From: Macrostomum lignano
Taxonomy: Eukaryota
Assembly (NCBI GenBank): GCA_002269645.1
Contig: NIVC01000455.1
Location: forward strand, 248,001 to 312,000
Length of the DNA stretch: 64,000 nt
Reading direction: 5' to 3'
In this document: positions 3,216 to 64,000 of the stretch, piece after piece
Position numbering within the stretch: the stretch's first letter is position 1
How the letters are laid out: each line of letters begins with the position of its first letter
Position numbers and translations under genes: made by a program
The notes under the pieces: model-generated
What the model saw: only the letters and a program-made list of their open reading frames with translations
What the model was told of the DNA's origin: nothing
Database searches by the model: none

Positions 3216-3685
3216 TTTTCCTCTCTTTTAATTCTCTTGGTTTTCAATTATGAGAGGATAATCTCGCACCGTGAATCCCAGTGACCCCAGGTGACCTCAG
3301 CCAAACCAGGCCGCAAGCAGCTGCCTCAGCAGCTCACGCAAGATTCAAAAGTGAAGCGCAACTCTCAGCTGGAGAAGCGCATCAAGAAAACTCAACTCCA
3401 TAGCAAACCGACACCCCAGCAGCGACTGAGCGTCTGAGAATCAATTTCTAGATGGGGATCAATTCGCTTCCATTGGGGATAAAATTGAACTGGAGTAGCA
3501 TATTAGCCGGAGCAAAGATTTTCCACGGCTCCCCAGCTTCCTCCTCCAGCCTCATCAATGATGCAGTGGTTTGCAAGCAAGCTGGATAAATTTAATTGAG
3601 TCAAAATTATCAACTATTAATGCGATTAAGTCCACCGCTTTGTTGGGACCAGCAGCCCGGTCGGGGAAAATTGGATCTCAACTCT

Positions 3686-4545
3686 TTATCTTCTCTCTCC
3701 CTTCATCTCCGCGTCTCTCTGCCTTCATCTCCGCGTCTCTCTGCCTTCATCTCCGCGTCTCTCTCTCTTCATCTCCGCGTCTCTCTCCCTTCATCTCCGC
3801 GTCTCTCTCCCTTCATCTCCGCGTCTCTCTCCCTTCATCTCCGCGTCTCTCTGCCTTCATCTCCGCGTCTCTCTCCCTTCATCTCCGCGTCTCTCTCTCT
3901 TCATCTCCGCGTCTCTCTCTCTTCATCTCCGCGTCTCTCTCCCTTCATCTCCGCGTCTCTCTCCCTTCATCTCCGCGTCTCTCTCCCTTCATCTCCGCGT
4001 CTCTCTGCCTTCATCTCCGCGTCTCTCTCCCTTCATCTCCGCGTCTCTCTCTTCATCTCCGCGTCTCTCTCTCTTCATCTCCGCGTCTCTCTCCCTTCAT
4101 CTCCGCGTCTCTCTCTTCATCTCCGCGTCTCTCTCCCTTCATCTCCGCGTCTCTCTGCCTTCATCTCCGCGTCTCTCTGCCTTCATCTCCGCGTCTCTCT
4201 GCCTTCATCTCCGCGTCTCTCTGCCTTCATCTCCGCGTCTCTCTGCCTTCATCTCCGCGTCTCTCTGCCTTCATCTCCGCGTCTCTCTCCCTTCATCTCC
4301 GCGTCTCTCTGCCTTCATCTCCGCGTGTCTCTCCCTTCATCTCCGCGTCTCTCTCCCTTCATCTCCGCGTATCTCTCCCTTCATCTCCGCTTCTCTATCC
4401 CTTCATCTCCGCATTTCTCTCCCTTCATCTCCGCGTCTCTCTCCCTTCATCTCCGCGTCTCTCTCTTCATCTCCGCGTCTCTCTCTCTTCATCTCCGCGT
4501 CTCTCTCCCTTCATCTCCGCGTCTCTCTCCCTTCATCCCGTGTCT
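3686..4545. repeat. 20-22-bp pyrimidine-rich minisatellite CTTCATCTCCGCGTCTCTCTCC, probably intronic
   Basis: Direct tandem repetition, just past the GTGAGC donor at 4641 (minus). Confidence 0.95.
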
Positions 4546-4641
4546 TCCTCTTCATCTCTGCATCTCTCACCGTCTGCTGTCCCTACACCCTCTTTCTACC
4601 CGCCACAGATCCGTCCCGGTCACCTCACAGCCTCCGCTCAC

Positions 4642-13058: not shown

Positions 13059-14081
13059 ATGGCAGGCTGCGCTCTGATTCTGCTCTGCTGCGTCGAGCTG
13101 ATCATTTGCGACAGCTCTGTTGTCCAGTGGCAGAATCTGGGACTGCCGCAGTGCCTGCCCGAGGCCCAAGCAGTGCGGGTGGCCGAAACTCCATTCGGCA
13201 TCTCCGACTGCGTCCTGCTCGCCATGTCCACGAAAGACTCGACCGGCCAGCTGGTGGCCCAGTTCGACTCGGACACTTGCCAGTGCTCGCTCTTCCAATA
13301 CACCGCAGTGTGCCACCTCATCGATGGACTCGCTGCTGCAGAGAGCTCACAGTCCCGCCGCTGTGCCGCATTCGCCAATGACAGAGCCGCCAAGTTCCTC
13401 ACCTTGAGCAGGAAGCTCATGCTGGGTGTGGGCTCGAAGCTGAGGGCCGCCTGGGTGATGAGCGACGATGCGGACGCCAGCAGGAGCAACTTGGTGTGCG
13501 GCCAGACGCAGCAGTGGATGTCGGAGAATGTGGAGTGGAGCAGCGAGGGAGCCAAGCTCGACGGAGTGTCGTCCAAGATGTGGCTGGAGAACGTGGAGTT
13601 CGCGAGCGTGCAGCAGGGACTCACGTGGCTGGTCAGGCTCAAGCGGGCGATCCAAGTAGCCCCACCTCTGATCGAGAGTTACAGCTGCGTCTCAGTTCTA
13701 ATAGGGGCCGCCTTCTGGGACGGACATCCTAATACGCGGGGTTTGTACTTCTTTAGGAAAGCTCCAAACTATTCTGTGTTCAGAACAGCTGCTTCAACAA
13801 ACTCCTTTAACCCGGATGAATTTGTTGAGGTCGGCATTACTTCTGCATCTCCGTCAAGCCGCGACTTCTTCTCCAACTCCGGGTTCGTGTCGCAGTCGAG
13901 TGTGGTTCAGATCAATAACCGTACTACAACTGAGATTCCAACATGCCGCTGCATCCGCTTGGGATTTCGACATGGCGACTCGCGAATGCTGAACGGCACG
14001 GTGCAGGCGGTGGCCGTCATGAACGACACGATGACGGAGGCTGAGATCAGCAGCTTCTTCGGTCTCGTGCGGTCGCCCTAA
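13059..14081 (+). CDS. Secreted PAN/apple-like + LamG/ConA-like (pentraxin-fold) protein, paralog P1, intronless, 340 aa
   Basis: Signal peptide; Cys-spaced N-terminal module (DCVLLA..AQFDSDTCQCSLF); LamG_3-like motifs LTWLVRLK, FVEVGITS and IRLGF..LNGTVQAVAVMNDTMTEAEI; TATTTAAA about 40 bp upstream. Confidence 0.75.
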   Translation: MAGCALILLCCVELIICDSSVVQWQNLGLPQCLPEAQAVRVAETPFGISDCVLLAMSTKDSTGQLVAQFDSDTCQCSLFQYTAVCHLIDGLAAAESSQSRRCAAFANDRAAKFLTLSRKLMLGVGSKLRAAWVMSDDADASRSNLVCGQTQQWMSENVEWSSEGAKLDGVSSKMWLENVEFASVQQGLTWLVRLKRAIQVAPPLIESYSCVSVLIGAAFWDGHPNTRGLYFFRKAPNYSVFRTAASTNSFNPDEFVEVGITSASPSSRDFFSNSGFVSQSSVVQINNRTTTEIPTCRCIRLGFRHGDSRMLNGTVQAVAVMNDTMTEAEISSFFGLVRSP

Positions 14082-21800: not shown

Positions 21801-24800
21801 AGATGCTTTGGTCTATGATTGAAGGCCCTCCTAAATACAGTGGGTATTTAGGGAGTTAGAATGGATTTGATTATCGATGGGATTTCAAATAGATTGGATT
21901 ATTGATGGGATTTCAGATGGATCGGATTATCGATAGAATTTCAGATGGATTGGATTATTGATGAGATTTCCAAGACAGATTGGATTATTGATGGGATTTC
22001 TATGATAGATTGGATTATCCTTGGGGTTTCAGATAGATTGGATTATTGATGAAATTCCAGATTGGATTATCAATGGGCCTTCAGATTGGATTATTGATGG
22101 GATTCCAGATTGGATTATCGATGGGCCTTCAGATTGGATTATTGATGGGATTCCAGATTGGATTATCGATGGGCCTTCAGATTGGATTATTGATGGGATT
22201 CCAGATTGGATTATCGATGGGCCTTCAGATTGGATTATTGATGGGATTCCAGATTGGATTATCGATGGGCCTTCAGATTGGATTATTGATAGGAGTTCAG
22301 ACTGATTGGATTATCGATGGGAGTTCAGACAGATTGGATTATTGATGGGAGTTCAGACAGATTGGATTTTCAATAGGATTTTCAGATAGATTGGATTATC
22401 AATGGGATTTTCAGATAGATTGGATTATCAATGAGATTTTCAGATAGATTGGATTATCAATGGGATTTTCAGATAGATTGGATTATCAATGGGATTTTCG
22501 GATAGATTGGATTATCAATGGGATTTTCAGACAGATTGGATTATCGATGGAATTTTCAGATAGATTGGATTATCAATGGTATTTTCAGATAGATTGGATT
22601 ATCAATGGGATTTTCAGATAGATTGGATTATCAATGGTATTTTCAGATAGATTGGATTATCAATGGTATTTTCAGATAGATTGGATTATCAATGGGATTT
22701 TCAGACAGATTGGATTATCAATGGTATTTTCAGATAGATTGGATTATCAATGGGATTTTCAGACAGATTGGATTATCAATGGTATTTTCAGATAGATTGG
22801 ATTATCAATGGTATTTTCAGATAGATTGGATTATCAATGGGATTTTCAGATAGATTGGATTATCAATGGTATTTTCAGATAGATTGGATTATCAATGGTA
22901 TTTTTAGATAGATTGGATTATCGATGGGATTTCAGATAGATTGGATTATCGATGGGATTTCAGATAGATTGGATTATCGATAGGATTTCAGATTGGATTA
23001 TCGATGGGATTTCCAAGACAAGTTGGATTATCGATAAGTGTTCAGAGAGATTGGAATCTGGATTATCAATGGGATTTCAGACTGGTTATTGGTGAGATTT
23101 CAGAATTCAGATAGATTGGATTATAAGATATCAGTGCATGTATCTGGGTACTAAGACTACAAACAAAGCAAAGGTACTCCTGTCCCAGTCAAAACAGCCA
23201 ATAATGCATAGACGCATATCAAAAATAATTCTAAGCTGCAACCCTCCGCCCAGACCTGGTCCGCGAGGCCAACAGCACTCTCAGGCTGGCCCGGGAGTTT
23301 CTCCGGACTGGCAACCTGGCCAAGGCCAAGCGGCTGCTTGAGCACGCCAGGCAGCTCAACCCGTACGATGCCGAGGCCATGGCTGCCTACGGGGAGGTGT
23401 TTGAGCACCACCGACCGCCCGATTATGTGAAAGCTGAGCACTACTACGGCAAAGCGCTGCTGACTGATCCCACCAATGAGAAGGTGAGTCTTGGCTTACC
23501 TGACATCCTGCTCGGAGCCAGACTGATATCCCAGATCGCGTGTCACTTCACATCCCCCAAATATCCTCACAGAATCCCATCGGTAATCCAATATCCCAAA
23601 TCTATCCCAAAATATCCCCAATTCCCAGGAATCCCATCGGTAATCCAATATCCCAAGCCCCCACGATCCAACGATAATCTGATATCCCAAATCCCCAGGA
23701 ATCCCATCGGCAATCCAATGTCCCAAGTAATCCAATATCTCAAATCCCCAGTAATCCAATGTCCCTAATCCCAAGTAATCCAATATCTCAAATCCCCAGT
23801 AATCCAATGTCCCTAATCCTCAGGAATGCCATCGGTAATCCCTGATCCCCAGAAAGAGCAATAATACCTAGATAGTCGTAATCCCAGCAGTAGCCTGCAC
23901 AGTGCACAATCTGTCCCACTTTCTCACCCTCCGCCGTCCCCAGGCCAAGGCCTCCCGCAAGCGAACTCTGCCCCTGGTTGAGCAGATCGACCAGGCCAGG
24001 TTCAACCGCATCGACCAGAAGGTGTACCAGTACTACCACATCCCGGAGACGCACCCGGGCCTCCGCCGGCTGAAGAAGGAGCACTACTTCCGCTACGTGT
24101 ACCACAGCAACGCCATCGAGGGCAACACGCTGGACCTGGCGCAGACCCGCGCCATCCTGGAGACCCGCATCGCAGTTGGCGGCAAGAGCCTGCTTGAGCA
24201 CAACGAAGTCCTGGGCCTCGACGCCGCTCTCATGTTTCTCAATAGCAGCCTGCTGAGAAAGCCGGGACCCCTGCTGCTCAGCGACCTGCTGGAGATCCAC
24301 CGCAGAGTTCTGGGCTATGTGGACCTGCAGGAGGCTGGGCGGCTCAGGAATACTCAGGTGAGGTCCCTGTTTCAAATCAATCAGTCCCAGTTGCAAACCA
24401 ATCAGTCCCAGTTTCAAACCAATCAGTCCCAGTTTCAAACCAATCAGTCCCAGTTGCAAACCAATCAGTCCCAGTTGCAAACCAATCAGTCCCAGTTTCA
24501 CACCAATCAGTCCCAGTTTCAAACCAATCAGTCCCAGTTGCAAACCAATCAGTCCCAGTTTCACACCAATCAGTCCCAGTTTCAAACCAATCAGTCCCAG
24601 TTTCAAACCAATCAGTCCCAGTTTCACACCAATCAGTCCCAGTTTCAAACCAATCAGTCCCAGTTTCAAACCAATCAGTCCCAGTTTCAAACCAATCAGT
24701 CCCAGTTTCACACCAATCAGTCCCAGTTTCAAACCAATCAGTCCCAGTTTCAAACCAATCAGTCCCAGTTGCAAACCAATCAGTCCCAGTTTCAAACCAA

Positions 24801-26608
24801 TCAGTCCCAGTTTCAAACCAATCAGTCCCAGTTTCAAACCAATCAGTCCCAGTTTCAAACCAATCAGTCCCAGTTTCACACCAATCAGTACCAGTTTCAA
24901 ACCAATCAGTCCCAGTTTCAAACCAATCAGTCCCAGTTTCACACCAATCAGTCCCAGTTTCACACCAATCAGTCCCAGTTTCACACCAATCAGTCCCAGT
25001 TTCACACCAATCAGTCCCAGTTTCAAACCAATCAGTCCCAGTTTCAAACCAATCAGTCCCAGTTTCAAACCAATCAGTCCCAGTTTCACACCAATCAGTC
25101 CCAGTTTCACACCAATCAGTCCCAGTTTCAAACCACCCCCTCCCGCCCAGGTGTTCATCGCGGACTTCGAACCCCCGCCCGCCAACCTTGTGCCCAGCCT
25201 GATGGCGGACTTCCTCAACTGGCTGAACTCTGAGGACACCGCCGAGCTGCACCCGGTGGAGGTGGCCGCCCTGGCGCACTGGAAGCTGGTGTACATTCAC
25301 CCATTCTACGATGGCAACGGCCGCACCGCCAGGTCTGTGATGGGGATGCGCGGATATTTTAATGCGAACTGTTTTCTAAATGGCATCCGGAGTTTGGTGA
25401 ATTTTTTCATTTCGGTACCATTTTAGCATTTCAGGGCCTTTTTTAGTCTTTGGTGTCGTTTTAAGAATTCCGGGTGCCATTTTCAGGATTCCTTGGTGCC
25501 ATTTTCAGGATTTCTTGGTGCCATTTTCAGGATTCCTTGGTGCCATTTTCAGGATTCCTTGGTGCCATTTTCAGGATTCCTTGGTGACATTTCAGGATTT
25601 TTTGGTGCCATTTTCAGGATTCCTTGGTGCCATTTTTAGGATTCCTTGATGCCATTTTCAGGATTCCTTGGTGCCATTTTCAGGATTCCTTGGTGCCATT
25701 TTCAGGATTCCTTGGTGCCATTTTCAGGATTCCTTGGTGACATTTCAGGATTTTTTGGTGCCATTTTCAGGATTCCTTGGTGCCATTTTCAGGATTCCTT
25801 GGTGCCATTTTCAGGATTCCTTGGTGCCATTTTCAGGATTCCTTGGTGCCATTTTCAGGATTCCTTGGTGACATTTTCAGGATTCCTTGGTGCCATTTTC
25901 AGGATTCCTTGGTGCCATTTTCAGGATTCCTTGGTGACATTTTCAGGATTCCTTGGTGCCATTTTCAGGATTCCTTGGTGCCATTTTCAGGATTCCTTGG
26001 TGCCATTTTCAGGATTCCTTGGTGCCATTTTCAGGATTCCTTGGTGACATTTTCATGATTTTGGGTGCCATTTTCAGGATTTCTTGGTGCCATTTTCAGG
26101 ATTCCTTGGTGCCATTTTCAGGATTTCTTGGTGCCATTTTCAGGATTTCTTGGTGCCATTTTCAGGATTCCTTGGTGCCATTTTCAGGATTCCTTGGTGC
26201 CATTTTTCAGGATTTTTTGGTGCCATTTTCAGGATTCCTTGGTGCCATTTTCAGGATTTTACTGTAAGATTATGAATTTTAGTGTCATTTTTTCTCTTCG
26301 GTGCGAAACTCGAACCCCAACCCCCTCGCCGCAGGCTGCTGATGAACCTGATCCTCATGCGATCCGGCTACCCACCGGCCATTGTCCGGGTGGAGGAGCG
26401 GGCCATCTACTACCAGCTCATCAAGGAGGCCAACGAAGGCGACGTCCGGCCTTTCATCCGCTTCATCGGGCACTGCACGGAGGCCACCATCGATGAGTTC
26501 CTGCTCACCGCACAGCGGGTGTCCGACTTTGAGGCGGCGGAGTCCGGCGCCTCGCTGTCGCTTGCCAAGCAGTCAGAGGACTGCAAGCCGAGGGTCATCA
26601 ACCTGTGA
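18877..26608 (+). CDS. FICD: FIC domain-containing AMPylase (HYPE), 607 aa; exons 18877-19600, 23254-23483, 23944-24357, 25151-25332, 26335-26608
   Basis: TPR region (AKRLLEHARQLNP..KAEHYYGKAL), RTLPLVEQIDQ, inhibitory SNAIEGN, catalytic HPFYDGNGRTAR, RLLMNLILMRSGYPP, ANEGDVRPFIRFI; all phases consistent (1824 nt). Exon 1 link inferred from its N-terminal TM anchor and phase-1 donor G|GTAAT. Confidence 0.93.
21865..23100. repeat. GATTGGATTAT-based minisatellite (24-bp then 29-bp units) in FICD intron 1
   Basis: Direct tandem repetition. Confidence 0.95.
24362..25133. repeat. 21-bp minisatellite AACCAATCAGTCCCAGTTTCA filling FICD intron 3
   Basis: Direct tandem repetition between donor 24358 and acceptor 25150. 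Confidence 0.97.
25470..26260. repeat. 22-bp minisatellite CCATTTTCAGGATTCCTTGGTG in FICD intron 4
   Basis: Direct tandem repetition. Confidence 0.95.
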
Positions 26609-28190: not shown

Positions 28191-28298
28191 GTTTTGGACA
28201 ATTTCTATTAGATTTATTTTAGCTGCCCACTTTAGGTTTGCGGCGCTGATTTATTACTGGGCTGCTGATTGTCACATCTCTTAACTGTCCGCTCGCAG

Positions 28299-31200
28299 CT
28301 GCTTTTTAAGCGAAGCCGCCCTCCACCGCCTTCGCCATCCGTGGCGCTGGCCGCCTCCGCCGCCGTCCTGCAGCCTCGCCAGCTGCTCCAGGCCTGCCCG
28401 GTGTCCACCAGCTGCCGCCGGCCCTTCCTCCAGAGCATCATCTCCGTTCGCGCCACCGACCGGGAGCGCAAAGTGGAGGAGCGGCGCCAGCTGGAGCGGC
28501 GGCGCCGGCTGGAGGACCTCACCAGACAGGCCGCCGTGGCCGCCCCGGCGCCGGCCAGACTGCGGCAGCCGGAGGCGGCCTTCAGCCCGGAGGTCTTGGC
28601 TGATAAAGAGCGGCGCCGGCAGGAATTCCACGACTCCATCTTCCTGTACATGCAGCGGTACGGCCGCACCAGGCGGGGCCACGTTGAGTTCATCGAGGCC
28701 ATGCGGAGCCGCCTGCAGGAGCTGGGCGTGCACAAGGATCTGCAGGTAGGGTTCGTTGGGTAGGGTGGGGTTTCGTTGGGTAGGGTGGGGTTTCGTTGGG
28801 TAGGGTGGGGTTTGGTTGGGTAGGGTGGGGTTTCGTTGGGTAGGGTGGGGTTTCGTTGGGTAGGGTGGGGTTTCGTTGGGTAGGGTGGGGTTTCGTTGGG
28901 TAGGGTGGGGTTTGGTTGGGTAGGGTTTGGTTGGGTAGGGTTTGGTTGGGTAGGGTTGGGTTTGGTTGGGTAGGGTTGGGTTTGGTTGGGTAGGGTTGGG
29001 TTTGGTTGGGTAGGGTGGGGTTTGGTTGGGTTTGGTTGGGTAGGGTTATGTTTTGTTGGGTAGGGTTGGGTTTGGTTGGGTAGGGTGGGGTTTGGTTGGG
29101 TAGGGTGGGGTTCGGTTGGGTAGGGTTTGGTTGGGTAGGGTTTGGTTGGGTAGGGTTGGGTTTGGTTGGGTAGGGTAGGGTTTGGTAGGGTAGGGTTTAG
29201 TTGGGTAGGGTTTGGTTGGGTAGGGTTGGGTTTGGTTGGGTAGGGTGGGGTTTGGTAGGGTAGGGTTTGGTTGGGTAGGGTTTGGTTGGGTAGGGTTGGG
29301 TTTGGTTGGGTAGGGTGGGGTTTGGTTGTGTAGGGTTTGGTTGGGTAGGGTTTGGTTGGGTAGGGTTGGGTTTGGTTGGGTAGGGTGGGGTTTGGTTGTG
29401 TAGGGTGGGTTTGGTTGGGTAGGGTTGGGTTTGGTTGGGTAGGGTGGGGTTTGGTTGGGTTTGGTTGGGTAGGGTGGGGTTTGGTAGGGTAGGGTAGGGT
29501 GGGGTTTGGTTGTGTAGGGTGGGGTTTGGTTGGGTAGGGTTGGGTTTGGTTGGGTAGGGTGGGGTTTGGTTGGGTAGGGTGGGGTTTGGTTGGGTAGGGT
29601 GGGGTTCGGTTGGGTAGGGTGGGGTTGAGCAGAGTGGGGTTCAGCAGGGTCTGTTTGAGTAGGGCGGGCATACTGCAGTTACATAAGCCATCAGGGCACT
29701 GAGTACCAACCAGGCCTTCATAGCAGCAGCTTCCCCCGCCCCTCAGAGCTACAAGGCCCTGCTAGACGTGTTCCCCAAGGAGGTGATGCGGGTGCGCACG
29801 ATGTGGCAGAGCGAGTTCAGGCACTACCCCAGACAGCAGGACACGGCCATCGCTCTGCTGGACACGATGAACGAGCACGGAGTGATGCCGGACACGGACA
29901 TGGGCCTGCAGATCAGTCGGATATTCGGCACCGAGTCCTACGTGATGACCAAGTTCCAGCGCATGATGTACTGGATGCCCAAGCTGCGGCACGCTGACCC
30001 GTGGCCGGCTGTGAGGCTCACCAGCTCCGGCCTGCAGTATCTGCCCGCGCCCGAGAGCTTCAGGTTGGCTGGCTGTGAATATATTATTTTATCCGGCAAA
30101 GTACTAACATCGACTAATGGTGAACACCAGTGCTTAAATATTTAGCATTCATAAAGGTTTTAGATGAATGAGTCACGGATGCATGAGTCAGGAATGAATG
30201 AGTCACGAAGGAATGAGTCACGGATGTATGAGTCACGGAGGAATGAGTCTCGGATGTATGAGTCACGGAGGAATGAGTCTCGGATGTATGAGTCACAGAG
30301 GAATGAGTCATGGATGTGTGAGTCACGGATGTATGTGTCACGTACGCCAGTGCAGATGGCACAATTCTAAAAATAGTCCAAAGTGTACGCATAACACAAC
30401 CTATACTCCAACGCTGCACAGGCTTAGAGCGGAAGTACATTATGCAATAAATAATGTACTCAAATATTAGTTTTAAAGATTTTGTCCCCCTACTGGCAAA
30501 GCGTTACTTCAGTACTATTATTGTATTAGCACGATTCGAGACTAGAAAATACTGTGCTGTCGTCCTACATAGATTCTGAATACTGGTTATTGCCTATGGA
30601 ACGAGACAATGCGTTACGTTGCGTTCTTGCTTGCGCATTGCTTCTTTATTTAGATTGTTTTGTGTTTCGCATCGCAAATACTTTGCTTTTCACTGCAATC
30701 ACTTCCCAATCGATTCGTCAGGTTTCGCTTAGGACTTTTTCGGATATTGCATTTACAAAGCGCAGCTAAACAAACTGGCTTATTGCTTGGATGCCAACCG
30801 TTTTAAGTTGATTCTGAGTTACTAGCGAGACTGTGCTCACATCTGGGTCGATAGTTGACGTCCACAAAATCTGTTCGTTCTCCAAATGCCTTCTGGACGA
30901 TTCTCAGGATTGTTCATTGTGAATCGCTTTGTAAAATCTGCACGTTCTCCAAATGCCTTCTGGACGATCGATTCTCAGGATTGAGCATTGTGAATCGCTT
31001 TGTAAAATCTGCAGGTTCTCCAAATGCCTTCTGGACGATCGATTCTCAGAATTGTTCATTGTGAATCGCTTTGTAAAATCTGCACGTTCTCCAAATGCCG
31101 TCTGGACGATTCTCAGGATTGTTCATTGTGAATCGCTTTGTAAAATCTGCACGCTCTCCAAATGCCTTACGGACGATTCTCAGGATTGTTCATTGTGAAT

Positions 31201-41741: not shown

Positions 41742-42850
41742 TCAGCGCACCAAGCCGAAGAAGCTGTTGATCTCAGCCTCCGTCATTGTGTCGTTCATGA
41801 AAGCCACCGCATGCACCGTGCCGTTCAGCATTCGCGAGTCGCCAGGTCGAAATCCCAAGCGGATGCAGCGGCATGTCGACACGGTTGCGTTACGCTCATC
41901 ACCATGATTCAAACTGGATTGCGGCACGAACGCGGAGTTGGAGAAGAAGTCGAGGCTTGACGGAGACGCCGAAGTGACGCCGACCTCAACAAATCCGTTC
42001 GGGTCAAACGAGTTCGTGGCAGATGGTGTAAAGTACTCAAAGTAAGATAAAGCGACTCTGAAGAAGTACAGGCCCCATCCGCCTGTCCAGCCGTCCCAAA
42101 ACGCCGCGCCTCGATCCCCCGTGGAGTCGCAGTTGTAGGATTCGAGCAGCGTTGCCGCGACTCGGACAGTCCGCTTGAGCCTGACCAGCCACGTGAGTCC
42201 CTGCTGCACGCTCGCGAGCTTTACGTTCTCCAGCCACATCTTGGACGACACTCCGTCGAGCTTGGCTCCCTCGCTGCTCCACTCCACATTCTCCGACATC
42301 CACTGCTGCGTCTGGCCGCACACCAAGTTGCTCCTGCTGGCGTCCGCATCGTCGCTCATCACCCAAGCGGCCCTCAGCTTCGAGCCCACACCCAGCATGA
42401 GCTTCCTGCTCAAGGTGAGGAACTTGGCAGCTCTGGCATTGGCGAATGCGGCACAGCGACGGGACTTCGAGCTCTCTGCAGCAGCGAGTCCATCGATGAG
42501 GTGGCACACTGCGGTGTATTGGAAGAGCGAGCACTGGCGAGTGTCCGAGTCGAACTGGGCCACCAGAAGGCCGCTCGAGCGCTCGGCTTCGAGCACGCAG
42601 TCGAGGACGGAGCCCGATGGTCTCGTCCACAACACCAGCGAGTCGCTCAGGCAGCTCTTCGTCTCCAGGCGGCGCCAACCTCGCTGGCAGTCGCAGCGGG
42701 CGGGCCGAGGAGCCAGGCAGACGAGGAGGACGGTGAGCAGAGCGTGGGCTGGAAAGTGACCGGCTGAGCTGAGCGAGCTGGAATTGCGATAATTGCATGA
42801 AAAATGACATGAGACAATGTTTCAGGATTCTGCTCACCTGAATATTGCAT
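41742..42850 (-). CDS. Secreted PAN/apple-like + LamG-like protein, paralog P3, intact, 339 aa; exons 42850-42838 and 42748-41742
   Basis: ATGCAATATTCAG|GTGAGC, 89-nt intron, TTTCCAG|; gives signal peptide MQYSAHALLTVLLVCLAPRPARC; 1020 nt in frame to TGA. Confidence 0.8.
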
Positions 42851-53179: not shown

Positions 53180-54970
53180 TCTCAACAGGCAGTCGCAAGT
53201 GTGCACACCGCCCACTGAACGCCCCACTTAGTTGTCCCACTGGGTCGCTTTCCGAGTGCCGGGTTGTCCTGCCATACTGGCGGCTCGCACTGGGCCGGTC
53301 GCATCAGCGTGACTGCTTGTCGTGACCAGATAAACATCGATCCTATTAACAATCGCTCGTTTTGCAAGCTTTTGAAGCAGTCTCAAACTGATTTGGTTGA
53401 AAGTTTGATAGAAGACAAGGTCTTAACAACGGCCTGGCTGTCAGAGTAGAAATTAATGTCAAAGTTGCTGATGCCAGCTTGATGCAGATGCTCAGCACAC
53501 TGGTTGATGGCCATGATGTCGGATTGAAAAACCGAGACATTCTCATCAAGATTAAGGCTCTCTTGCACGATCGCCGCACCCTTGTGGAAAAAAAACTATG
53601 CCAGCAGTAACTAGGCGTCGCACAGGAATCCATCAGTGAAGCAGTGAATGCCCTGACTTCTCTGGTTGACGCCCTGCACGTAGTGGGTGGCTCCCTCGCG
53701 GTGGAAGGGTACACTTGATGAGTGAGGGGGTTTACAATCCACCTCGTTTAAATTGAAGTGAATGTGTTGAAGGTCGCGACGGATATATAATCCAGGTGTA
53801 GAATAGGTGCTGTTGTTTGTGTTGCGACAGAGGCGCCGAGCCAGCCTAAAAGGACCGCCTCGCCAGCGCCAGCACCCTCGCGGGGGCGGCCGTCAGGGTC
53901 TCGAGAGGTACATCGTCGTCATCAAAAATGTCCAGCCTAGCTTGACGGAGGGCTGGGCACGAGAGCCAGTGAACCAGGTCTTCAGGCCCGTCCTGGCAAC
54001 GTGGGCAAGTCGGGTCGGCCTCGCGGTTGACCAGGGCTTCGTATGCTTTAAGGAGACTACAGTGCCCGGAGCGGAGACGAGCGAGAAAAACGGCGTCTTG
54101 GCGGCAGGAGATCTCGGCTCGGTCGCGCTGGCGGTCCAGGGCGCGGTAGACCGAGGCGGTTCTCGAGTGGCTGATGGGGGGTCACAGATGGCCCGGCAGA
54201 TGTAGGCTTTGGCGCACAGAAAGGAGATGGCAGCCGGGAGGTCCGAGCGGGAAGCCGCTTCCTTAGCGGCTTCGTCGGCAAGTTCATTGCCAGCCAGACC
54301 GCAGTGGGCCGGGACCCACTGGAGGGACAGGCCCGGAAGAGAAGACAGATCGGGCAGTGGGTAGCTGTGCTGGGCATGGCCAGCCAAGGCGGAGAGGAGC
54401 GACCTGCTGTCGGAGCAAATGAGGACCCTGCCCATCGGGTGGGAGTGTCGGATCCAGGACAGGGCCAACTGAAGCGCGCGTCGCTCCTCATCGAAGCTAC
54501 TGGTCACGGGCACACCGCGGCACGCGATCGTCTCGATGACGGCTGGAGACGCCGGGTCGCCCCTCGTGATGACGCATGCCGCAACGCCGTGGGCGAAGCC
54601 GAGGGCGTCCAGGAGCCGCCGGTGTGGCAGGCAGAATGGGTGTCCTATCAGGTATGAAACCCTAGGGAGAGTTGGTAACGAATATATCACAAATTAAACG
54701 CGTGGTACCTTTCATCGCCTCAGCTCTGATAACCAGGTGCAGTGGAAGCATGTTGAGGATGGTGTTGAGTAAGGGGTGGAAGGGTACGCACCGGTGATGG
54801 CCCGGCAGATGCTACCCTGCAATTGATACAGCCGGTCCCGCACTGTTTTCAGCTTCAACGCACTGGACCAGATAAAACACGCGTAGTGGTGATGCTGGGT
54901 TTGATGATTCCCGTGTAGATCCACCGGACCGTCTTGGTAGAGAGCCCCCAGGTTGGCCTGATGGCCCACT
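53180..54970 (-). mobile_element. RNase H-bearing non-LTR fragment (R1/LOA-like), interrupted by a nested element
   Basis: LQGSICRAITGAYPSTP and SVFQSDIMAI..FYSDSQAVV RNase H motifs. Confidence 0.65.
53810..54650 (-). mobile_element. Nested 3' fragment of an I-group/Ingi-like LINE (RNase H plus C-terminal zinc knuckle)
   Basis: ICSDSRSLL, LQWVPAHCGLAGNELADEAAK; downstream LARLRSGH..CPRC..EDL.HW; AAC-like tail near 53810. Confidence 0.75.
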
Positions 54971-59680: not shown

Positions 59681-59706
59681 TAAAATAGTTAAAATTTAAA
59701 GGGGAT

Positions 59707-60298
59707 GTCAACTTAAGCACCAGAATGGAGCCCGAAGTTCAGCTCCGGACCAAACCGACTGCAATCGATAACTTGTCGGCCCAGACGACTAGAATCGCCG
59801 AGACATCCCATCCGGCTCCCTTCCTTGGGGTCCCAGGGGATAAAGGGGATAAAATGGGGATCTCATGTCAACTTAAGGCTCTGGAATGGAGCCCGAAGTT
59901 CAGCTCCGGACCAAACCGACTGCAATCGATAACTTGTCGGCCCAGACGACTAGAATCGCCGAGACATCCCATCCGGCTCCCTTCCTTGGGGTCCCAGGGG
60001 ATAAAGGGGATAAAATGGGGATCTCATGTCAACTTAAGGCTCTGGAATGGAGCCCGAAGTTAAGCTCCGGCCCAAACCGACTGCAATCGATAACTTGTCG
60101 GCCCAGACGACTAGAATCGCCGAGACATCCCATCCGGCTCCCTTCCTTGGGGTCCCAGGGGATAAAGGGGATAAAATGGGGATCTCATGTCAACTTAAGG
60201 CTCTGGAATGGAGCCCGAAGTTCAGCTCCGGACCAAACCGACTGCAATCGATAAGTTGTCGGCCCAGACGACTAGAATCGCCGAGACATCCCATCCGG
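59707..60298. repeat. 161-bp near-perfect tandem repeat, about 3.7 copies
   Basis: ORF track starts recur at 59725, 59886 and 60047. Confidence 0.95.
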
Positions 60299-60982: not shown

Positions 60983-63919
60983 TTACGAGTTTAAAAGTGC
61001 AACGAGCACGATGCACTCAGGCTCACGTACGAACGGGTTATAGTCTGACGTAACTTTCATGTCGTCAATTCTCGTCCACACACAGCTCAGTACGCTTGCT
61101 GTGAAATGTCCCGATTTCAGTCGGTTTCCATGGTGTGATATTGTGGCCACTGGCTTACCAAGTGTAGAAACACCCCCTGACCTTGAAGAAAAGCTTACAG
61201 GAGTTTGAAGCTTAAGGTGGCCATCCATACTAGCACGATCAAGATATATCAGGGTAAACTTTCCAGGTGTTACTACGATCTCTTGATTACAATCGCCCAG
61301 GCAATTGGCGTCCGAACATTTCACTACCTGAGGAGCGACAAAAGCGCAGAAGATTTTGTCTAAACTGACAATTGAGCGCTCAAATTGACAGAGAGGAATG
61401 CAAATCACTCTGTTATCGATTGTGCCAACAGGAACTTCAGCACTTGTGCGCTGGCAATCCCGACAAGTTTGAATGAGTGAAAATTCTGTGAAAGCATCTG
61501 ATGACAGAAATTCCAGATGTATTAGAAGCGTTTGAACAAATTCGTTGACGCAATGGTGCTGATTTGTTTGAAATGAATCTGGATGTTGCAACCGAACTGC
61601 CGTTAACAGTGGAGTGACTGTTGCAGACCGCTGTTGCATCTCCGTCAGAAGACGAAGCAGCTCTCGATGGACTTGGTCGTTGCTAGTCTCTTTTAAAATG
61701 CATCCATTAGAATGCAGGCAGAGAAACAATTGCACTGCTGCATTTGCGTAGCACTGCAGGCCATTATTTGGCAACCCAAATAACTTCTTCGGCGAATTCA
61801 ATGAACCAGTAGCATTTGAACTGTGCCTCTGTTCATCTTGCTGCGATTCAGCACTGTCTCTGCGAGGTGCATTTGGAGCTGGATGACCACCAGATTGATC
61901 ATTGTAAAGATTGGCAATCAGTGCTTTTGGCAAAGCACTGTCAATAAATCGGAAGCTGCTGCCGCACATGTTGTAGCTTTCGGGGTGATATGCATAACAG
62001 CCTAGCATTCTAACCACAGCCATAACATGACTGTCACACCCTGCTGTCCTGCTTCCGGCCTTTGAGGATGAAAAGTAGCCATGCAGACGCAGCAGCCCCG
62101 AGTCACGAAATCCGAATCGGTTACCACTTGCAGTTTCGCAAATACGAAGGACAACTCGGTAAGTTTTTGACCGATGACGGGAATGAAGAACGGCTAAATA
62201 TATCCAAGATGGCCTCCATTCTCCAAACTTACTGCTCCACCCCTTTGGTGGCGCTCGCTGATGAAACTTCCAGCATTTTAAATGGCTTGGCAGTTCAGAA
62301 ATCAACAATTCGAAATCGCGCCACGAGTCTCCAGCGTAGCTACTGAGCACCTCATGAACTCTGACGTTTTCGATGTAGCGTTTTGACTGAAGAACGTGGT
62401 ATGGGCCGATGCTAAGCTCTTCCAGATTTCTTTCGTCAACGCTGGGGAACCCTGAACTTTCAGGGTCCAGGGGATCCACTGCTGTCCATTTTCGGGTAGA
62501 ACTCGTTGGTATTCGAGTCAAATCGCAATTGTACTCAAGTTGCTCAATTTCGTCTAGCTCATTCGCAATGAAAAGACGTTTAGCAAAGTTCCGTCCGTAT
62601 TCGAACATGGAGCAATCTGACCATGACGGCGGCAGACTCCTTGTAGCTTGAAATCCTGGATGCGAATGGTTGAATTTTGCCATGGAGTTTTCAATAACAA
62701 CATCGAGCCGGCTGCGTTCGGTAAACTCTGGGGCATGTAGCCATTGGTACGGCTCCTGTCGCTCATTTATGCATTTGTCCTGCTTGATTGCAGCAAAGCT
62801 ACATTCTACGAGATAACGGAAAAGCGTAGCGCAGCGACTTGTATTTGCTTCGATTGATGTATGCTTTCCTGGTATTGATCGGTCACCAACAGGAGCCTCA
62901 TTATTTACAAATTCAAACTGCTCGTTTAGAACTCGGTCACCTGGACTGGTCGGAAATAGAAGCGTCGTGCAGCCTTTACTATTAGTCTCTATAAAGTCGC
63001 GGAAGTTAACCGAAGTTGGTGAACAAAGTTGGTGGCTGTAACCTTTGTCGAAAATGCCAATAACGTGATAATCTTTCTGTACAGAGCATAGAATGCGCAA
63101 CAAAATGGGCTCTATTAGTCCTTCAGCCTCCATGTCAACTTGCATTGCAGTCAAATTCCCATCGCCCATTGTTGGCGAGATAGCGGCGGTAAGGGGAGCG
63201 GTGTAGATAATTTTTCCTCTACTGTTGACAACCGCCATTTTTTTGTTCACATTCATTTTCTTGCCGGAAAAGTAAGTTCGAATTTGCGTGTGGTGTGAGC
63301 TGCTCTTAGGGAGATAAAAGTAAGTATGATCACCCACTAGAAGAACAAGCTTCTTGCCTTTGAGTAGTGTGTGAAATACACCGAGAATAAATTGATCGCG
63401 TACTACATTTTCCTCAAGCAGAGTCTGAATCGGAGTCGACGCTATCGACCTCGGTTGATATGGATCCCGTAGGTACTGCTCCTTGGCAATCTCCCAAAAA
63501 ATGTCGCATGCTCTTTGGGCAGAAATGTTGAAATCGAAAGCTAATGATTGAAAGCTGCAACCTTGGCGAAGCTTCTTCAGGTACAAAAATATTCGAGATG
63601 GCTTTGTCAAAATACGAAGGCGAGATACTTCTGGTAACATTTCTGAGAAGCTATCGAAATCACTATAGCTAAGACCGCAAATACGTTTGAACTCCTTCTC
63701 ATTTGCGGTTCGTGGAAAAAGGTTTGGGTTCAAAAAAACTTTCACATACTTACCACCGACCGCAAGAAACTGAAGCGCCTCTCGTGCGTTTCTCGGAGGC
63801 GCGAAGGCTCCAGACGATTCAGATGAGCAGCGACCACATCTAGTCGTTTCGAGATGTCGGTTCAAATTGGCTGCTTTGCTGAATTGATGACCACATTGAG
63901 AGCAAGTAAAATCGGACAT
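60983..63919 (-). CDS. 978-aa transposase-deubiquitinase fusion: C2H2 finger, HTH, PIF/Harbinger-ISL2EU-type DDE core, degenerate SWIM, USP/peptidase C19 domain
   Basis: CSQC..F...NL.RH; LYLKKLRQGCSFQSLAFDFNIS (HTH); VGDHTY, MGDGNL, FDKGY, RYLVECSFAAIK (DDE); FGLPNNGLQCYANAAVQ Cys box (Cys codon 61753-61751); QHHCVNEF; CRDC and CSDANC zinc ribbon; HHGNRLKSGHFTA (His 61108-61106) and WTRIDD; first ATG at 63919. Confidence 0.85.
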   Translation of the reverse strand: MSDFTCSQCGHQFSKAANLNRHLETTRCGRCSSESSGAFAPPRNAREALQFLAVGGKYVKVFLNPNLFPRTANEKEFKRICGLSYSDFDSFSEMLPEVSRLRILTKPSRIFLYLKKLRQGCSFQSLAFDFNISAQRACDIFWEIAKEQYLRDPYQPRSIASTPIQTLLEENVVRDQFILGVFHTLLKGKKLVLLVGDHTYFYLPKSSSHHTQIRTYFSGKKMNVNKKMAVVNSRGKIIYTAPLTAAISPTMGDGNLTAMQVDMEAEGLIEPILLRILCSVQKDYHVIGIFDKGYSHQLCSPTSVNFRDFIETNSKGCTTLLFPTSPGDRVLNEQFEFVNNEAPVGDRSIPGKHTSIEANTSRCATLFRYLVECSFAAIKQDKCINERQEPYQWLHAPEFTERSRLDVVIENSMAKFNHSHPGFQATRSLPPSWSDCSMFEYGRNFAKRLFIANELDEIEQLEYNCDLTRIPTSSTRKWTAVDPLDPESSGFPSVDERNLEELSIGPYHVLQSKRYIENVRVHEVLSSYAGDSWRDFELLISELPSHLKCWKFHQRAPPKGWSSKFGEWRPSWIYLAVLHSRHRSKTYRVVLRICETASGNRFGFRDSGLLRLHGYFSSSKAGSRTAGCDSHVMAVVRMLGCYAYHPESYNMCGSSFRFIDSALPKALIANLYNDQSGGHPAPNAPRRDSAESQQDEQRHSSNATGSLNSPKKLFGLPNNGLQCYANAAVQLFLCLHSNGCILKETSNDQVHRELLRLLTEMQQRSATVTPLLTAVRLQHPDSFQTNQHHCVNEFVQTLLIHLEFLSSDAFTEFSLIQTCRDCQRTSAEVPVGTIDNRVICIPLCQFERSIVSLDKIFCAFVAPQVVKCSDANCLGDCNQEIVVTPGKFTLIYLDRASMDGHLKLQTPVSFSSRSGGVSTLGKPVATISHHGNRLKSGHFTASVLSCVWTRIDDMKVTSDYNPFVREPECIVLVALLNS

Positions 63920-64000
63920 TACTAGCAAGTATAAAACGCAATCTGCAACAAATCTGCACCTGTCATAAAACTAAGTAAGAAAAACTGACCAAAACCTTAA

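What the first reader, a model, noticed from the sequence alone, without database searches (positions are those of the whole stretch)
60983..63919. PIF/Harbinger-ISL2EU-type transposase fused to a complete USP (C19) deubiquitinase
A single intact, intronless 978-aa ORF joins a C2H2 finger, HTH and DDE core (D in VGDHTY, D in MGDGN, E in RYLVECSF) to a C-terminal domain of about 270 aa. That domain shows the USP boxes in order: Cys box GLPNNGLQCYANAAVQ, QHHCVNEF (QxDxxEF-like), CxxC...CxxxxC finger, PGKFTLIYLDR, His box HHG...SGHFTA and W..IDD..V, so the Cys-His-Asp triad looks intact. Capture of Ulp1/SENP and OTU proteases by Mutator, Zisupton, Ginger and Helitron elements is established; I know of no described USP/C19 fusion on a Harbinger/ISL2EU transposase. 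Possible roles (inference): self-stabilisation against proteasomal degradation, or removal of repressive histone ubiquitin as an anti-silencing device. It could alternatively be a domesticated chromatin enzyme.
Basis: partly seen in the sequence, partly recalled or inferred. Interest (0 to 1): 0.9.

Follow-up and report, generated by a model that had tools for sequence, protein, structure and literature searches.

The report
Transposase fused to a deubiquitinase
A flatworm-like genome carries one intact 978-residue gene that joins a cut-and-paste (Harbinger/IS5-type) transposase to a complete ubiquitin-removing USP protease, and the same fusion recurs in at least eight distant marine eukaryote lineages, so it is a real, old and apparently undescribed transposon family rather than an assembly accident.

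Summary
Window 60983-63919 (minus strand) is one stop-free 978-codon ORF. Shuffles of the region give at most 192 codons.

- **USP domain:** the C-terminal ~270 aa passes Pfam UCH, models confidently (pLDDT 90) and matches solved USP2/12/18/46 folds. Cys723, His938 and Asp952 are conserved.
- **Transposase:** residues 56-680 model as one compact unit (pLDDT 91) and are homologous to DDE_Tnp_4 transposases (hhalign 100%).
- **Triad correction:** the catalytic residues are D197, D291 (IFDKGY) and E372.
- **Subgroup label:** "ISL2EU" is not supported. There is no THAP domain, no YqaJ ORF was seen, and TIR/TSD could not be tested because only 81 bp lie upstream before the window ends.
- **Recurrence:** the fusion occurs in at least 8 lineages below 50% identity (TARA/ENA, Logan, JGI). 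Transposase and USP trees are congruent within clades. Some copies are broken, which is transposon-like.
- **Host:** probably Macrostomum lignano.
- **Prior art:** Ulp1/OTU on Ginger and Mutator-like elements, VTD/OTU/UCH on Helentrons, and a one-line note of a transposase_11-Peptidase_C19 protein in Trichomonas.

Verdict: a new variant of a known kind. The role of the protease is inferred only.

The parts
60983..63919 (-). Complete intronless ORF of 978 codons plus stop; transposase-USP fusion protein
   Evidence: Homologues align collinearly from aa 4 to aa 976.
63836..63910 (-). N-terminal C2H2-like (C-x2-C-x12-H-x5-C) zinc finger, aa 4-28; presumed DNA-binding module
   Evidence: Pfam zf-C2H2 scores 18.6-24.1 bits, just under the gathering score of 25.2. 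The same finger is conserved in P0001 and in the N-terminal extensions or upstream ORFs of relatives.
63494..63610 (-). HTH_Tnp_4-type helix-turn-helix, aa 104-142
   Evidence: Pfam PF13613 scores 22.7-24.2 bits against a gathering score of 27. The region is helical in the AF2 model. It aligns to the HTH_Tnp_4 region of DDE_Tnp_4 proteins in hhalign.
62765..63352 (-). RNase-H-like DDE catalytic core, aa 190-385. Catalytic residues are D197 (nt 63329-63331), D291 (nt 63047-63049) and E372 (nt 62804-62806).
   Evidence: Alignment columns DxTY, DKGY/DRGF and R-x3-E are shared with DDE_Tnp_4-positive proteins. AF2 secondary structure puts D197 in strand 1, D291 just after strand 4, E372 in a long helix and D253 at the start of helix 1. 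D197, D253, D291 and E372 are invariant in 8 fusion proteins.
61880..62764 (-). Transposase C-terminal region, aa 386-680, folded together with the core. It contains a SWIM-like CxC...CxH module at aa 614-640 (nt 62000-62080) that has lost its first two cysteines here (SSSKAGSRTAGCDSHV).
   Evidence: The AF2 model of aa 56-700 has pLDDT 91 and pTM 0.89 as one unit. The motif CxCKxGxRxxGCCSHV is nearly invariant in the family. The Ser replacements are shared by the window and L001. One relative gives a weak Pfam SWIM hit.
61799..61879 (-). Low-confidence Ser/Gln/Pro-rich linker, aa 681-707, between the transposase and the USP domain
   Evidence: pLDDT is below 50 at aa 678-700 in model 2 and at aa 690-707 in model 1. 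The region varies in length and is unalignable among homologues.
60986..61798 (-). Compact USP (peptidase C19) deubiquitinase domain, aa 708-978. Catalytic residues are Cys723 (nt 61751-61753), His938 (nt 61106-61108) and Asp952/953 (nt 61061-61066). The zinc-ribbon cysteines are C819, C822, C868 and C873.
   Evidence: Pfam UCH scores 41.3 bits against a gathering score of 23.9. AF2 gives pLDDT 90.4 and pTM 0.87. Foldseek against PDB gives E about 1e-16 and TM about 0.7 to USP46, USP2, USP12, USP18 and USP8. A profile search of PDB sequences gives E 3e-37 to USP2. Invariant C, H, G-H and Zn cysteines are shown.

Best explanation
This is the transposase gene of a cut-and-paste DNA transposon that is active or only recently inactivated. 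It belongs to an undescribed lineage of the IS5-related PHIS (PIF/Harbinger-ISL2EU-Spy) superfamily.

The protein is built in this order: C2H2-like finger, HTH, DDE core (D197/D291/E372), a large C-terminal region with a SWIM-like module, a flexible linker, and a compact USP-class deubiquitinase.

Shown here:
- the architecture;
- confident folds for both halves;
- conservation of both catalytic triads;
- recurrence and co-divergence of the two halves in many lineages;
- broken copies in several lineages.

Inferred:
- The finger and HTH recognise the element ends, and the DDE core excises and reinserts the element.
- The tethered USP removes ubiquitin from proteins at the transpososome.
- The most likely target is the transposase itself or its partners, which would protect them from ubiquitin-dependent proteasomal removal. 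This role was proposed for Helentron-encoded DUBs.
- A second candidate target is the ubiquitin marks laid down on chromatin or repair factors at the excision break.
For: **ORF and motifs.**

**USP domain.** It passes Pfam UCH. AF2 gives pLDDT 90.4. Foldseek matches solved USP catalytic domains at E about 1e-16. The profile scores E 3e-37 against USP2. The catalytic Cys and His are invariant and Asp952 is nearly invariant (>=90%) in 17 USP sequences; N718, C723, H929, G937 and H938 are invariant in 8 fusions.

**Transposase.** AF2 gives pLDDT 91.0 with RNase-H topology. hhalign against a set of DDE_Tnp_4-positive proteins gives 100% probability and E 2.7e-56 over 458 columns. Relatives P0006, P0008, P0051, P0055 and P0065 pass Pfam DDE_Tnp_4.

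**Recurrence of the fusion.** It is seen in P0010 (1048 aa), P0021 (955), P0032 (1119), P0047 (1639), P0179/P0177/P0181 (1057-1380), P0195 (1010) and the JGI pair L001+L010. These come from independent TARA/ENA, Logan and JGI assemblies.

**Co-divergence.** The clade (P0021,(P0081/P0179,(P0047,P0069/P0195))) is recovered in both the transposase tree and the USP tree. So is the pairing of the window with its JGI relative.

**Transposon-like decay.**
- L001 has an in-frame stop and a frameshift.
- L001 and L010 are 89-95% identical to each other, and both are broken.
- L013 is 99% identical to the intact L014 but is split into three ORFs.
- Macrostomum lignano proteins P0011 and P0018 hold decayed fragments 42-56% identical to the window protein.

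**Precedent.** Helentron VTD DUBs are enzymatically active and were proposed to protect transposition proteins from the proteasome (PMC9741609).
Against: - No terminal inverted repeats or target-site duplication could be shown. Only 81 bp lie upstream of the ATG before the window ends. Candidate repeats in relatives are no better than chance.
- There is no second copy in the 64-kb window.
- No protein above 65% identity was found in the large databases, so the copy number in the host may be low.
- The SWIM-like finger, nearly invariant elsewhere, has lost two or three zinc ligands in this clade.
- Pfam DDE_Tnp_4 does not recognise this protein, because the core carries insertions. The spacings are D197-93-D291-80-E372.
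- Six TARA contigs carry the identical ORF, so they may be a single-copy locus.
- No enzymatic or transposition data exist.
Confidence: 0.6

Rival explanations
1. Domesticated gene. A transposase-USP fusion was captured by the host and is now kept as a single-copy cellular gene. It would act as a DNA- or chromatin-targeted deubiquitinase, and the DDE part would serve only as a DNA-binding or scaffold module.
For: - The ORF is intact, while the only other family members seen in the probable host species are old, decayed and 42-56% identical.
- There is no close paralogue in the window or in the databases.
- The SWIM-like zinc ligands are lost, and this is shared with the 50%-identical JGI relative, so the altered form has persisted.
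- No TIRs were found.
- Transposon-borne DUBs have been domesticated repeatedly (PMC9741609).
Against: - All three DDE residues and the conserved D253 are retained.
- The nearest relative lineage (L001/L010) consists of broken, mutually divergent copies, which is not what a conserved host gene looks like.
- The locus sits in a minisatellite-rich, gene-poor stretch.
- The gene has no introns.
Confidence: 0.22
2. The transposon is real, but the USP module is a pseudo-enzyme or ubiquitin-binding adaptor. It would recruit the transposase to ubiquitinated chromatin, for example at damaged or replicating DNA, rather than hydrolyse ubiquitin.
For: - The domain is unusually compact, about 260 aa against about 340 in USP2.
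- It is divergent, scoring only 37-47 bits against Pfam UCH in the fusions but 113-132 bits in free-standing USP hits.
- The QQDAxEF box reads QHHCVNEF in this clade.
Against: The catalytic Cys, the oxyanion Asn, the His-box His and the Asp/Asn are conserved across lineages that share only 15-35% identity. Conservation of this kind is the signature of retained catalysis. The zinc ribbon is intact.
Confidence: 0.1
3. Assembly misjoin or chance read-through joins an unrelated USP gene to a transposase.
For: None was found. The hypothesis was considered only because the window is highly repetitive.
Against: - The same collinear architecture occurs in at least 8 independently assembled lineages.
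- P0007 and L010 span the junction in a second organism.
- The transposase and USP trees are congruent.
Confidence: 0.02

Closest known systems
PHIS superfamily transposases (PIF/Harbinger, ISL2EU, Spy, Pangu, Nuwa; IS5-related, Pfam DDE_Tnp_4 + HTH_Tnp_4)
   Same: - The HTH + DDE core is homologous (hhalign 100%).
- The conserved D...K...D...D...P...R-x3-E pattern is present (PMC4122938).
- It shares a C-terminal CxC...CCSH SWIM-like module with a set of DDE_Tnp_4 proteins from springtails and metagenomes.
   Different: - Insertions in the core are large enough that Pfam DDE_Tnp_4 misses it. D291-P323 is 31 residues and P323-R368 is 44, against 11-19 and 18-28 in the published signature.
- It has an N-terminal C2H2-like finger instead of THAP (ISL2EU) or no finger (Harbinger, Spy).
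- No Myb/SANT or YqaJ partner ORF was seen.
- It has a C-terminal USP domain.
- The TSD, which defines PHIS groups, is unknown.
- In an NJ tree the family separates on a long branch from the DDE_Tnp_4-positive proteins, which were used to root the tree, so this separation is not an independent test.
Trichomonas vaginalis XP_001314237.1, transposase_11 (pfam01609) + Peptidase C19, mentioned by Bao, Kapitonov & Jurka 2010 citing Gladyshev & Arkhipova 2009
   Same: It is an IS4/IS5-clan DDE transposase joined to a C19 ubiquitin hydrolase (PMC2836005). This is the only prior mention I found of a USP on a DDE transposase.
   Different: - It is a one-sentence note, with no family description, structure or distribution.
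- The protist protein hits pfam01609, whereas the window family does not.
- I could not obtain the sequence or the cited paper, so homology to the present family is untested.
Ginger1 transposases with C-terminal OTU or Ulp1 domains; Mutator-like elements with Ulp1
   Same: A DDE transposase carries a C-terminal papain-fold ubiquitin/SUMO protease in the same ORF. A role in transposition or repair has been proposed (PMC2836005).
   Different: The transposase superfamily differs (retroviral-integrase-like or MULE). The protease families differ (C85 OTU and C48 Ulp1 rather than C19 USP).
Helentron/HLE2 rolling-circle elements carrying OTU, VTD and UCH domains
   Same: These are transposon-borne deubiquitinases. 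UCH (PF00443) is reported as stable cargo (PMC11417382). The VTD domains were shown to be active DUBs (PMC9741609). One USP hit here (P0127) follows a helicase C-terminal fragment.
   Different: Transposition is by rolling circle with RepHel, not by DDE cut-and-paste. The DUB is not fused to a DDE transposase.
Cellular USP catalytic domains (USP2, USP8, USP15, USP21, USP36, USP12/46, USP18)
   Same: The fold, catalytic triad, zinc-ribbon fingers and box order are the same.
   Different: - It is about 80 residues shorter.
- It shares 15-20% identity with these domains.
- It has no clear orthology to any one cellular USP.
- The second zinc pair is CxxxxC.

Membership tests
PHIS superfamily (PIF/Harbinger-ISL2EU-Spy; IS5-like DDE) | Transposase alignable over the whole catalytic region with known members (criterion E<1e-4 in PMC4482050) | tested here: met
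   phmmer hits to proteins that pass Pfam DDE_Tnp_4 (P0051, P0055, P0065 and others) at whole-library E 1e-7 to 1e-10. hhalign of the family against these proteins gives 100% and E 2.7e-56 over 458 columns.
PHIS superfamily (PIF/Harbinger-ISL2EU-Spy; IS5-like DDE) | Conserved D-K-D-D-P-R(3)E pattern with DDE on an RNase-H fold | tested here: met
   D197, K220/K226, D253, D291, P323 and R368-x3-E372 are present. The AF2 topology fits. The D291-P323 and P323-R368 spacings (31 and 44) exceed the published ranges; the others lie within about three residues of them.
PHIS superfamily (PIF/Harbinger-ISL2EU-Spy; IS5-like DDE) | Pfam DDE_Tnp_4 (PF13359) hit on the protein itself | tested here: not met
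   No hit even at E<=10 on aa 75-426. Relatives P0006 and P0008 pass.
PHIS superfamily (PIF/Harbinger-ISL2EU-Spy; IS5-like DDE) | Terminal inverted repeats and a group-specific target-site duplication | not testable with these tools
   The 5' flank lies beyond the window end. No significant TIR was found in the window or in relatives' contigs.
ISL2EU group | N-terminal THAP domain on the transposase | tested here: not met
   There is no THAP hit on the window protein or on about 35 relatives. The N-terminus is a C2H2-like finger.
ISL2EU group | Second ORF encoding a YqaJ exonuclease | tested here: inconclusive
   Upstream ORFs in relatives (L002 454 aa, L009 580 aa) are C2H2 proteins with no YqaJ. 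Nothing lies downstream in L011/L012. The upstream region of the window copy is not in the window.
ISL2EU group | AT target-site duplication within A|AT|T; TIRs starting GG | not testable with these tools
   The element ends are not defined.
PIF/Harbinger group | Second ORF with a Myb/SANT domain; TWA target-site duplication | tested here: inconclusive
   No Myb/SANT ORF was found in relatives' contigs. The TSD is unknown.
USP / peptidase C19 (Pfam UCH PF00443) | Profile match above the curated threshold | tested here: met
   37.5 bits for the whole protein and 41.3 bits for the domain, against a gathering score of 23.9.
USP / peptidase C19 (Pfam UCH PF00443) | Cys box with catalytic Cys and oxyanion Asn; His box with catalytic His; downstream Asp/Asn | tested here: met
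   N718, C723, H938 and D952/953 align with the invariant columns of 17 USP sequences and 8 fusions.
USP / peptidase C19 (Pfam UCH PF00443) | USP fold (thumb-palm-fingers) | tested here: met
   AF2 gives pLDDT 90.4 and pTM 0.87. The Foldseek top 50 are all USP catalytic domains, with E 1e-14 to 1e-17 and TM about 0.7.
USP / peptidase C19 (Pfam UCH PF00443) | Isopeptidase activity on ubiquitin or a ubiquitin-like modifier | not testable with these tools
   This needs a biochemical assay.

The most novel reading that the evidence does not exclude
An ancient, widespread and so far undescribed clade of PHIS-type cut-and-paste transposons (C2H2 finger - HTH - DDE - SWIM-like - USP) occurs in marine eukaryotes and flatworms. 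In it, a USP-class deubiquitinase has co-evolved with the transposase and is functionally required for transposition or for escaping host control. It could do this by stripping ubiquitin from the transposase, or from chromatin or repair factors at the break. This would make ubiquitin removal a general, convergently acquired requirement of eukaryotic DNA transposons (Ulp1, OTU, VTD, USP).
Probability: 0.3. Interest if true: 0.75.

Novelty: new variant of a known kind. Interest (0 to 1): 0.58.

Why it matters
Transposons have repeatedly picked up ubiquitin or SUMO proteases: Ulp1 on Mutator-like elements and Ginger, and OTU, VTD and UCH on Helentrons. Nobody knows why.

This case puts a fourth protease class (USP) in a different transposase superfamily, in one intronless ORF. 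Both halves have high-confidence models. At least eight divergent natural versions exist, plus natural USP-less sister lineages (P0003-5).

That makes a clean experimental system for three comparisons:
- wild type against C723A;
- wild type against a USP deletion;
- USP-bearing against naturally USP-less relatives.

These can test whether deubiquitination stabilises the transposase, steers break repair or counters silencing. The finding also adds a PHIS lineage that Pfam DDE_Tnp_4 fails to detect, which is relevant to repeat annotation of flatworm and plankton genomes.

Tried and rejected
1. **Pfam DDE_Tnp_4 on the core at E<=10:** no hit. Homology had to be shown through intermediates and hhalign.
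2. **PDB sequence search with the whole protein:** only weak zinc-finger hits.
3. **Foldseek of the transposase model against PDB:** the best match is Tn5 transposase at E 0.03, prob 0.84, TM 0.24-0.32. No solved PHIS structure exists, so this only weakly supports an IS4/IS5-like fold.
4. **TIR/TSD search:** nothing beyond chance in the window, the TARA contigs, or L008, L009, L011 and L012. L013 has an 18-nt 15/18 candidate (GGGTGAGTGGCGTGGACC), but it is no better than shuffles and has no matching TSD.
5. **Collection scans:** two scans of metagenome contigs (one search failed because no conserved stretch was available) and two of viral contigs found no relatives.
6. **The search for homologous proteins:** both the single protein and the fusion alignment returned only P0001. 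The exhaustive representative search was what found the family.
7. **dN/dS across TARA contigs:** impossible, because the six ORFs are nucleotide-identical.
8. **Single versus multiple capture of the USP:** deep nodes are unsupported in both NJ trees. USP-less P0003-5 sit near USP-bearing P0010, so either loss or repeated gain is possible.
9. **Gladyshev & Arkhipova 2009:** could not be read, to check the Trichomonas protein.
10. **Other copies or a partner ORF in the window:** none found.


Full report
**1. The observation**

The region holds one ORF on the minus strand, 60983..63928. The first ATG is at 63919, it encodes 978 codons, and the stop is at 60983-60985. It is about twice as long as any other ORF in the 64-kb window. 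The other long ORFs lie inside minisatellite arrays.

From the local composition, ln P of 978 stop-free codons is about -54. In 200 shuffles of the region the longest open run was 192 codons. Only 81 bp lie between the ATG and the window end.

**2. The C-terminal domain is a USP**

- Pfam UCH (PF00443) matches aa 715-958 at 37.5 bits. The isolated domain scores 41.3 bits. The gathering score is 23.9.
- I built a 17-sequence alignment of the domain with its relatives. It shows the canonical boxes, in order:
  - G-L-x-N-x-G-N-x-C-Y-x-N (Cys723, oxyanion Asn718);
  - the QQDAxEF box (QHHCVNEF here);
  - CxxC...CxxxxC (C819, C822, C868, C873);
  - the P-G-x-x-x-x-x-L-x-R strand;
  - H-x-G-x(4,5)-G-H-[YFW] (His938);
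  - W-x-x-x-D-D (Asp952/953).
- In that alignment C, H and G-H are invariant.
- AlphaFold2 on this alignment gives mean pLDDT 90.4 and pTM 0.87. Only the first 18 residues, the linker, are disordered.
- Foldseek against the PDB returns only USP catalytic domains at the top (USP46, USP2, USP12, USP18, USP8, USP4, USP21, USP35), with E 1e-15 to 1e-17, probability 1.00 and TM about 0.7.
- A profile search of PDB sequences gives USP2 at E 2.8e-37.

The domain is compact, about 260 aa, and is not an obvious orthologue of any one cellular USP.

**3. The N-terminal two-thirds is a DDE transposase of the IS5/PHIS kind**

Pfam sees only HTH_Tnp_4 (aa 104-142, 22.7-24.2 bits, threshold 27) and a C2H2-like finger (aa 4-25, up to 24.1 bits, threshold 25.2). 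It finds no DDE model, even at E<=10.

The exhaustive search of 1.84 billion representatives found 129 relatives. The nearer ones include P0006 and P0008, which pass Pfam DDE_Tnp_4. The more distant ones are full HTH_Tnp_4 + DDE_Tnp_4 proteins such as P0051, P0055, P0065, P0066, P0068, P0072 and P0077. Those that carry a name come from springtail genomes. hhalign of the near family against these proteins gives 100% probability and E 2.7e-56 over 458 columns, spanning the HTH, the core and the C-terminal module.

The alignment columns are unambiguous:

| Window motif | Aligns with | Residue |
|---|---|---|
| VGDHTY | DGTY | D197 |
| IFDKGY | DRGF | D291 |
| RYLVE | R-x-x-V-E | E372 |
| MGDGN | N-D-A | D253 |

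AlphaFold2 of aa 56-700 with a 46-sequence alignment gives pLDDT 91.0 and pTM 0.89 as one compact body. Its secondary structure places D197 in the first core strand, D291 immediately after the fourth strand, and E372 inside a long helix. D253 is at the start of the first core helix. This is the standard RNase-H arrangement.

It also fits the published PHIS pattern D...K...D...D...P...R(3)E, in which the DDE triad is the first D, the third D and the E. I infer this assignment from the Spy D(79-80)D(44-62)E spacing in PMC4122938.

The spacings here, D197-93-D291-80-E372, are inflated by insertions. That explains why Pfam misses the core. Foldseek of the transposase model finds nothing solid in the PDB. 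The best match is Tn5 transposase at E 0.03.

**4. The SWIM-like module**

The family and its DDE_Tnp_4 relatives share a nearly invariant C-x-C-K-x-G-x-R-x-x-G-C-C-S-H-V motif near the C-terminus. One relative gives a weak Pfam SWIM hit.

In the window the motif reads S-S-S-K-A-G-S-R-T-A-G-C-D-S-H-V. The 50%-identical relative L001 reads Y-S-S-S-K-A-G-S-R-T-A-G-C-D-C-H-V. So two to three zinc ligands were lost in the common ancestor of this clade, not by decay of this one copy.

**5. The fusion is not an artefact and not unique**

Transposase plus C-terminal UCH in one ORF occurs in:

| Protein | Length | Source |
|---|---|---|
| P0010/P0138 | 1048 aa | ENA, L009 |
| P0021 | 955 aa | Logan SRR25158262, L008 |
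| P0032 | 1119 aa | TARA, L002-L007 |
| P0047 | 1639 aa | ENA |
| P0177/P0179/P0181 | 1057-1380 aa | ENA, L013/L014 |
| P0195 | 1010 aa | ENA |

It also occurs in the JGI metagenome 3300040801, where L001 (transposase part) and L010 (junction plus USP) overlap.

In an alignment of eight fusions, these columns are invariant: D197, D253, D291, E372, H631, N718, C723, C819, C868, H929, G937 and H938.

P0003, P0004 and P0005 (1043-1075 aa) have the transposase with a long C2H2-bearing N-terminal extension. They have no USP in the ORF or in the 700-800 bp downstream of it.

Bootstrapped NJ trees give these results:
- The transposase family separates on a long branch from the DDE_Tnp_4 proteins. The tree was rooted on one of those proteins and the node carries no bootstrap support above 50%.
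- One clade with 100% support holds P0032, P0179, P0195, P0047 and P0021, plus P0053 and P0039. Every member whose full length is known carries the USP.
- A second clade joins the window with P0001 at 98% support.
- P0003-5 group with USP-bearing P0010, but this grouping is unsupported.

The USP tree recovers (P0021,(P0081,(P0047,P0069))) at 94/69/88% and (window, P0007, P0013) at 91%. This matches the transposase tree, because P0081 and P0069 are the representatives of the P0179 and P0195 clusters. The two halves have therefore been inherited together for a long time within clades. Whether the USP was captured once, with later losses, or several times is unresolved.

**6. Transposon or host gene?**

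Evidence for a transposon:
- L001 carries an in-frame stop and a frameshift.
- L001 and L010 are only 89-95% identical where they overlap, with a 137-bp indel, and both are broken.
- L013 is 99% identical to L014, but its reading frame is split into three ORFs while L014 is intact.
- Clusters around P0069 and P0081 contain many fragments of different length.
- Two Macrostomum lignano proteins (P0018 = UniRef A0A1I8IYQ6, and P0011) contain decayed pieces 42-56% identical to the window protein.

Evidence against, or neutral:
- No TIR or TSD could be established anywhere.
- There is no other copy in the window.
- No protein above 65% identity exists in the databases searched.
- The six TARA contigs with P0032 have identical ORFs and look like one locus sampled many times.

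I rate a transposon-encoded, recently functional gene at about 0.6. I rate domestication of this copy at about 0.2.

**7. Host**

P0011 and P0018 also contain, at 94-100% amino-acid identity over up to 86 residues, the translation of the 161-bp tandem repeat that lies at window 59705-60298. P0018 is annotated as Macrostomum lignano (taxonomy). The window therefore most likely comes from M. lignano or a very close relative. Its dense minisatellite content is what the sequence shows directly.

**8. Mechanism**

Shown: the domain order, both folds, both catalytic sets, and a disordered 25-30-residue linker between them.

Inferred from established knowledge of DDE transposases: the finger and HTH bind the element ends, and D197/D291/E372 coordinate the metal ions for cleavage and strand transfer.

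For the USP I commit to the following as most likely, at roughly one chance in three among the alternatives. It acts in cis or locally at the transpososome to remove ubiquitin from the transposase or its partners, and so protects them from proteasomal or segregase removal. This is the role proposed for the enzymatically validated VTD deubiquitinases of Helentrons (PMC9741609).

Alternatives:
- editing of damage-induced ubiquitin on histones or repair factors at the excision break, as suggested for Ulp1/OTU in PMC2836005;
- removal of repressive histone ubiquitin;
- a non-catalytic ubiquitin-binding role.

None of these is tested.

**9. Comparison with what is known**

By homology it is a PHIS-superfamily transposase. 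It fails the tested defining features of ISL2EU: it has no THAP domain, and no YqaJ ORF was seen in relatives. The remaining defining features, TSD and TIR, could not be tested (PMC4482050).

Protease-bearing transposases are an established theme:
- Ginger1 with OTU or Ulp1;
- Mutator-like elements with Ulp1;
- Helitron-type elements with OTU, VTD and UCH.

Bao et al. 2010 also mention in one sentence a Trichomonas protein with transposase_11 plus Peptidase C19. Full-text searches for UCH/USP together with DDE_Tnp_4, Harbinger or ISL2EU found no description of the present architecture. Repbase and InterPro could not be queried.

**10. Verdict**

It is wrong or unproven on "ISL2EU", and it overstates the lack of precedent.

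The finding is a new variant of a known kind. It is a recurrent, long-lived USP fusion in a divergent PHIS lineage, and it offers good experimental handles.

Noticed in passing
window 59705-60298: A 161-bp tandem repeat (3.7 copies, 97% matches) lies about 700 bp beyond the 3' end of the ORF. Its translation occurs at 94-100% identity inside two Macrostomum lignano protein models (P0018, P0011). In both it sits directly next to decayed fragments of the same transposase family, but in the opposite relative orientation to the window.
   Followed up: partly
window 58-41168: About 25 separate minisatellite arrays (periods 4-137 bp, many of 20-30 bp, up to 1.5 kb each) fill much of the first 41 kb. 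Several 'long ORFs' (for example 3571-4873, 23788-25296, 28232-29671) are just open frames through these arrays.
   Followed up: partly
window 28755-29626: A strongly strand-asymmetric G-rich array (unit GTTGGGTAGGGTGGGGTTTG, GC skew +0.4, AT skew -0.4). It is prone to forming G-quadruplexes and resembles degenerate telomere-like repeats.
   Followed up: no
window 53893-54690 (minus strand): An ORF with an RNase H match (Pfam PF00075, 26 bits, motif LQWVPAHCGLAGNELADEAAK). It is probably a fragment of a retrotransposon.
   Followed up: no
window 13059-14081 (+), 41742-42635 (-): Two ORFs with weak, sub-threshold Laminin_G_3 / ConA-like lectin similarity (about 19 bits). They may be members of one gene family or exons of larger genes.
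   Followed up: no
L009 202-5154: In the P0010/P0138 lineage, a 580-aa C2H2-finger ORF and the 1048-aa transposase-USP ORF are in the same frame, separated by a single TAG. Homology to the window protein starts right after that stop. In P0003-5 the homologous N-terminal part is fused. This could be stop-codon read-through, a conserved nonsense mutation or a non-standard code.
   Followed up: partly
window 62000-62080 (aa 614-640); L001 2746-2931: The SWIM-like CxC...CCSH motif is nearly invariant in the family and in DDE_Tnp_4 relatives. It has Ser in place of the first two Cys, and Asp in place of one of the CC pair, in both the window and its 50%-identical relative.
   Followed up: yes
P0127 (455 aa): This USP hit has an N-terminus with weak helicase C-terminal matches (Herpes_Helicase, UvrD_C_2). 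That is reminiscent of Helentron RepHel-UCH proteins, and it hints that transposon-borne USPs of different element classes may be related.
   Followed up: no
L013 1046-5180 versus L014 894-5036: These two ENA contigs are 99% identical. L014 encodes an intact 1380-aa C2H2-transposase-USP protein. In L013 the same gene is broken into three ORFs (718, 193 and 288 aa).
   Followed up: partly
L002 1568-2932 and equivalents in L003-L007: The TARA element has a 454-aa upstream ORF on the same strand, with C2H2-type fingers and an acidic tail. No YqaJ or Myb/SANT domain was found. It may be the DNA-binding partner, or a 5' exon of the transposase gene.
   Followed up: partly
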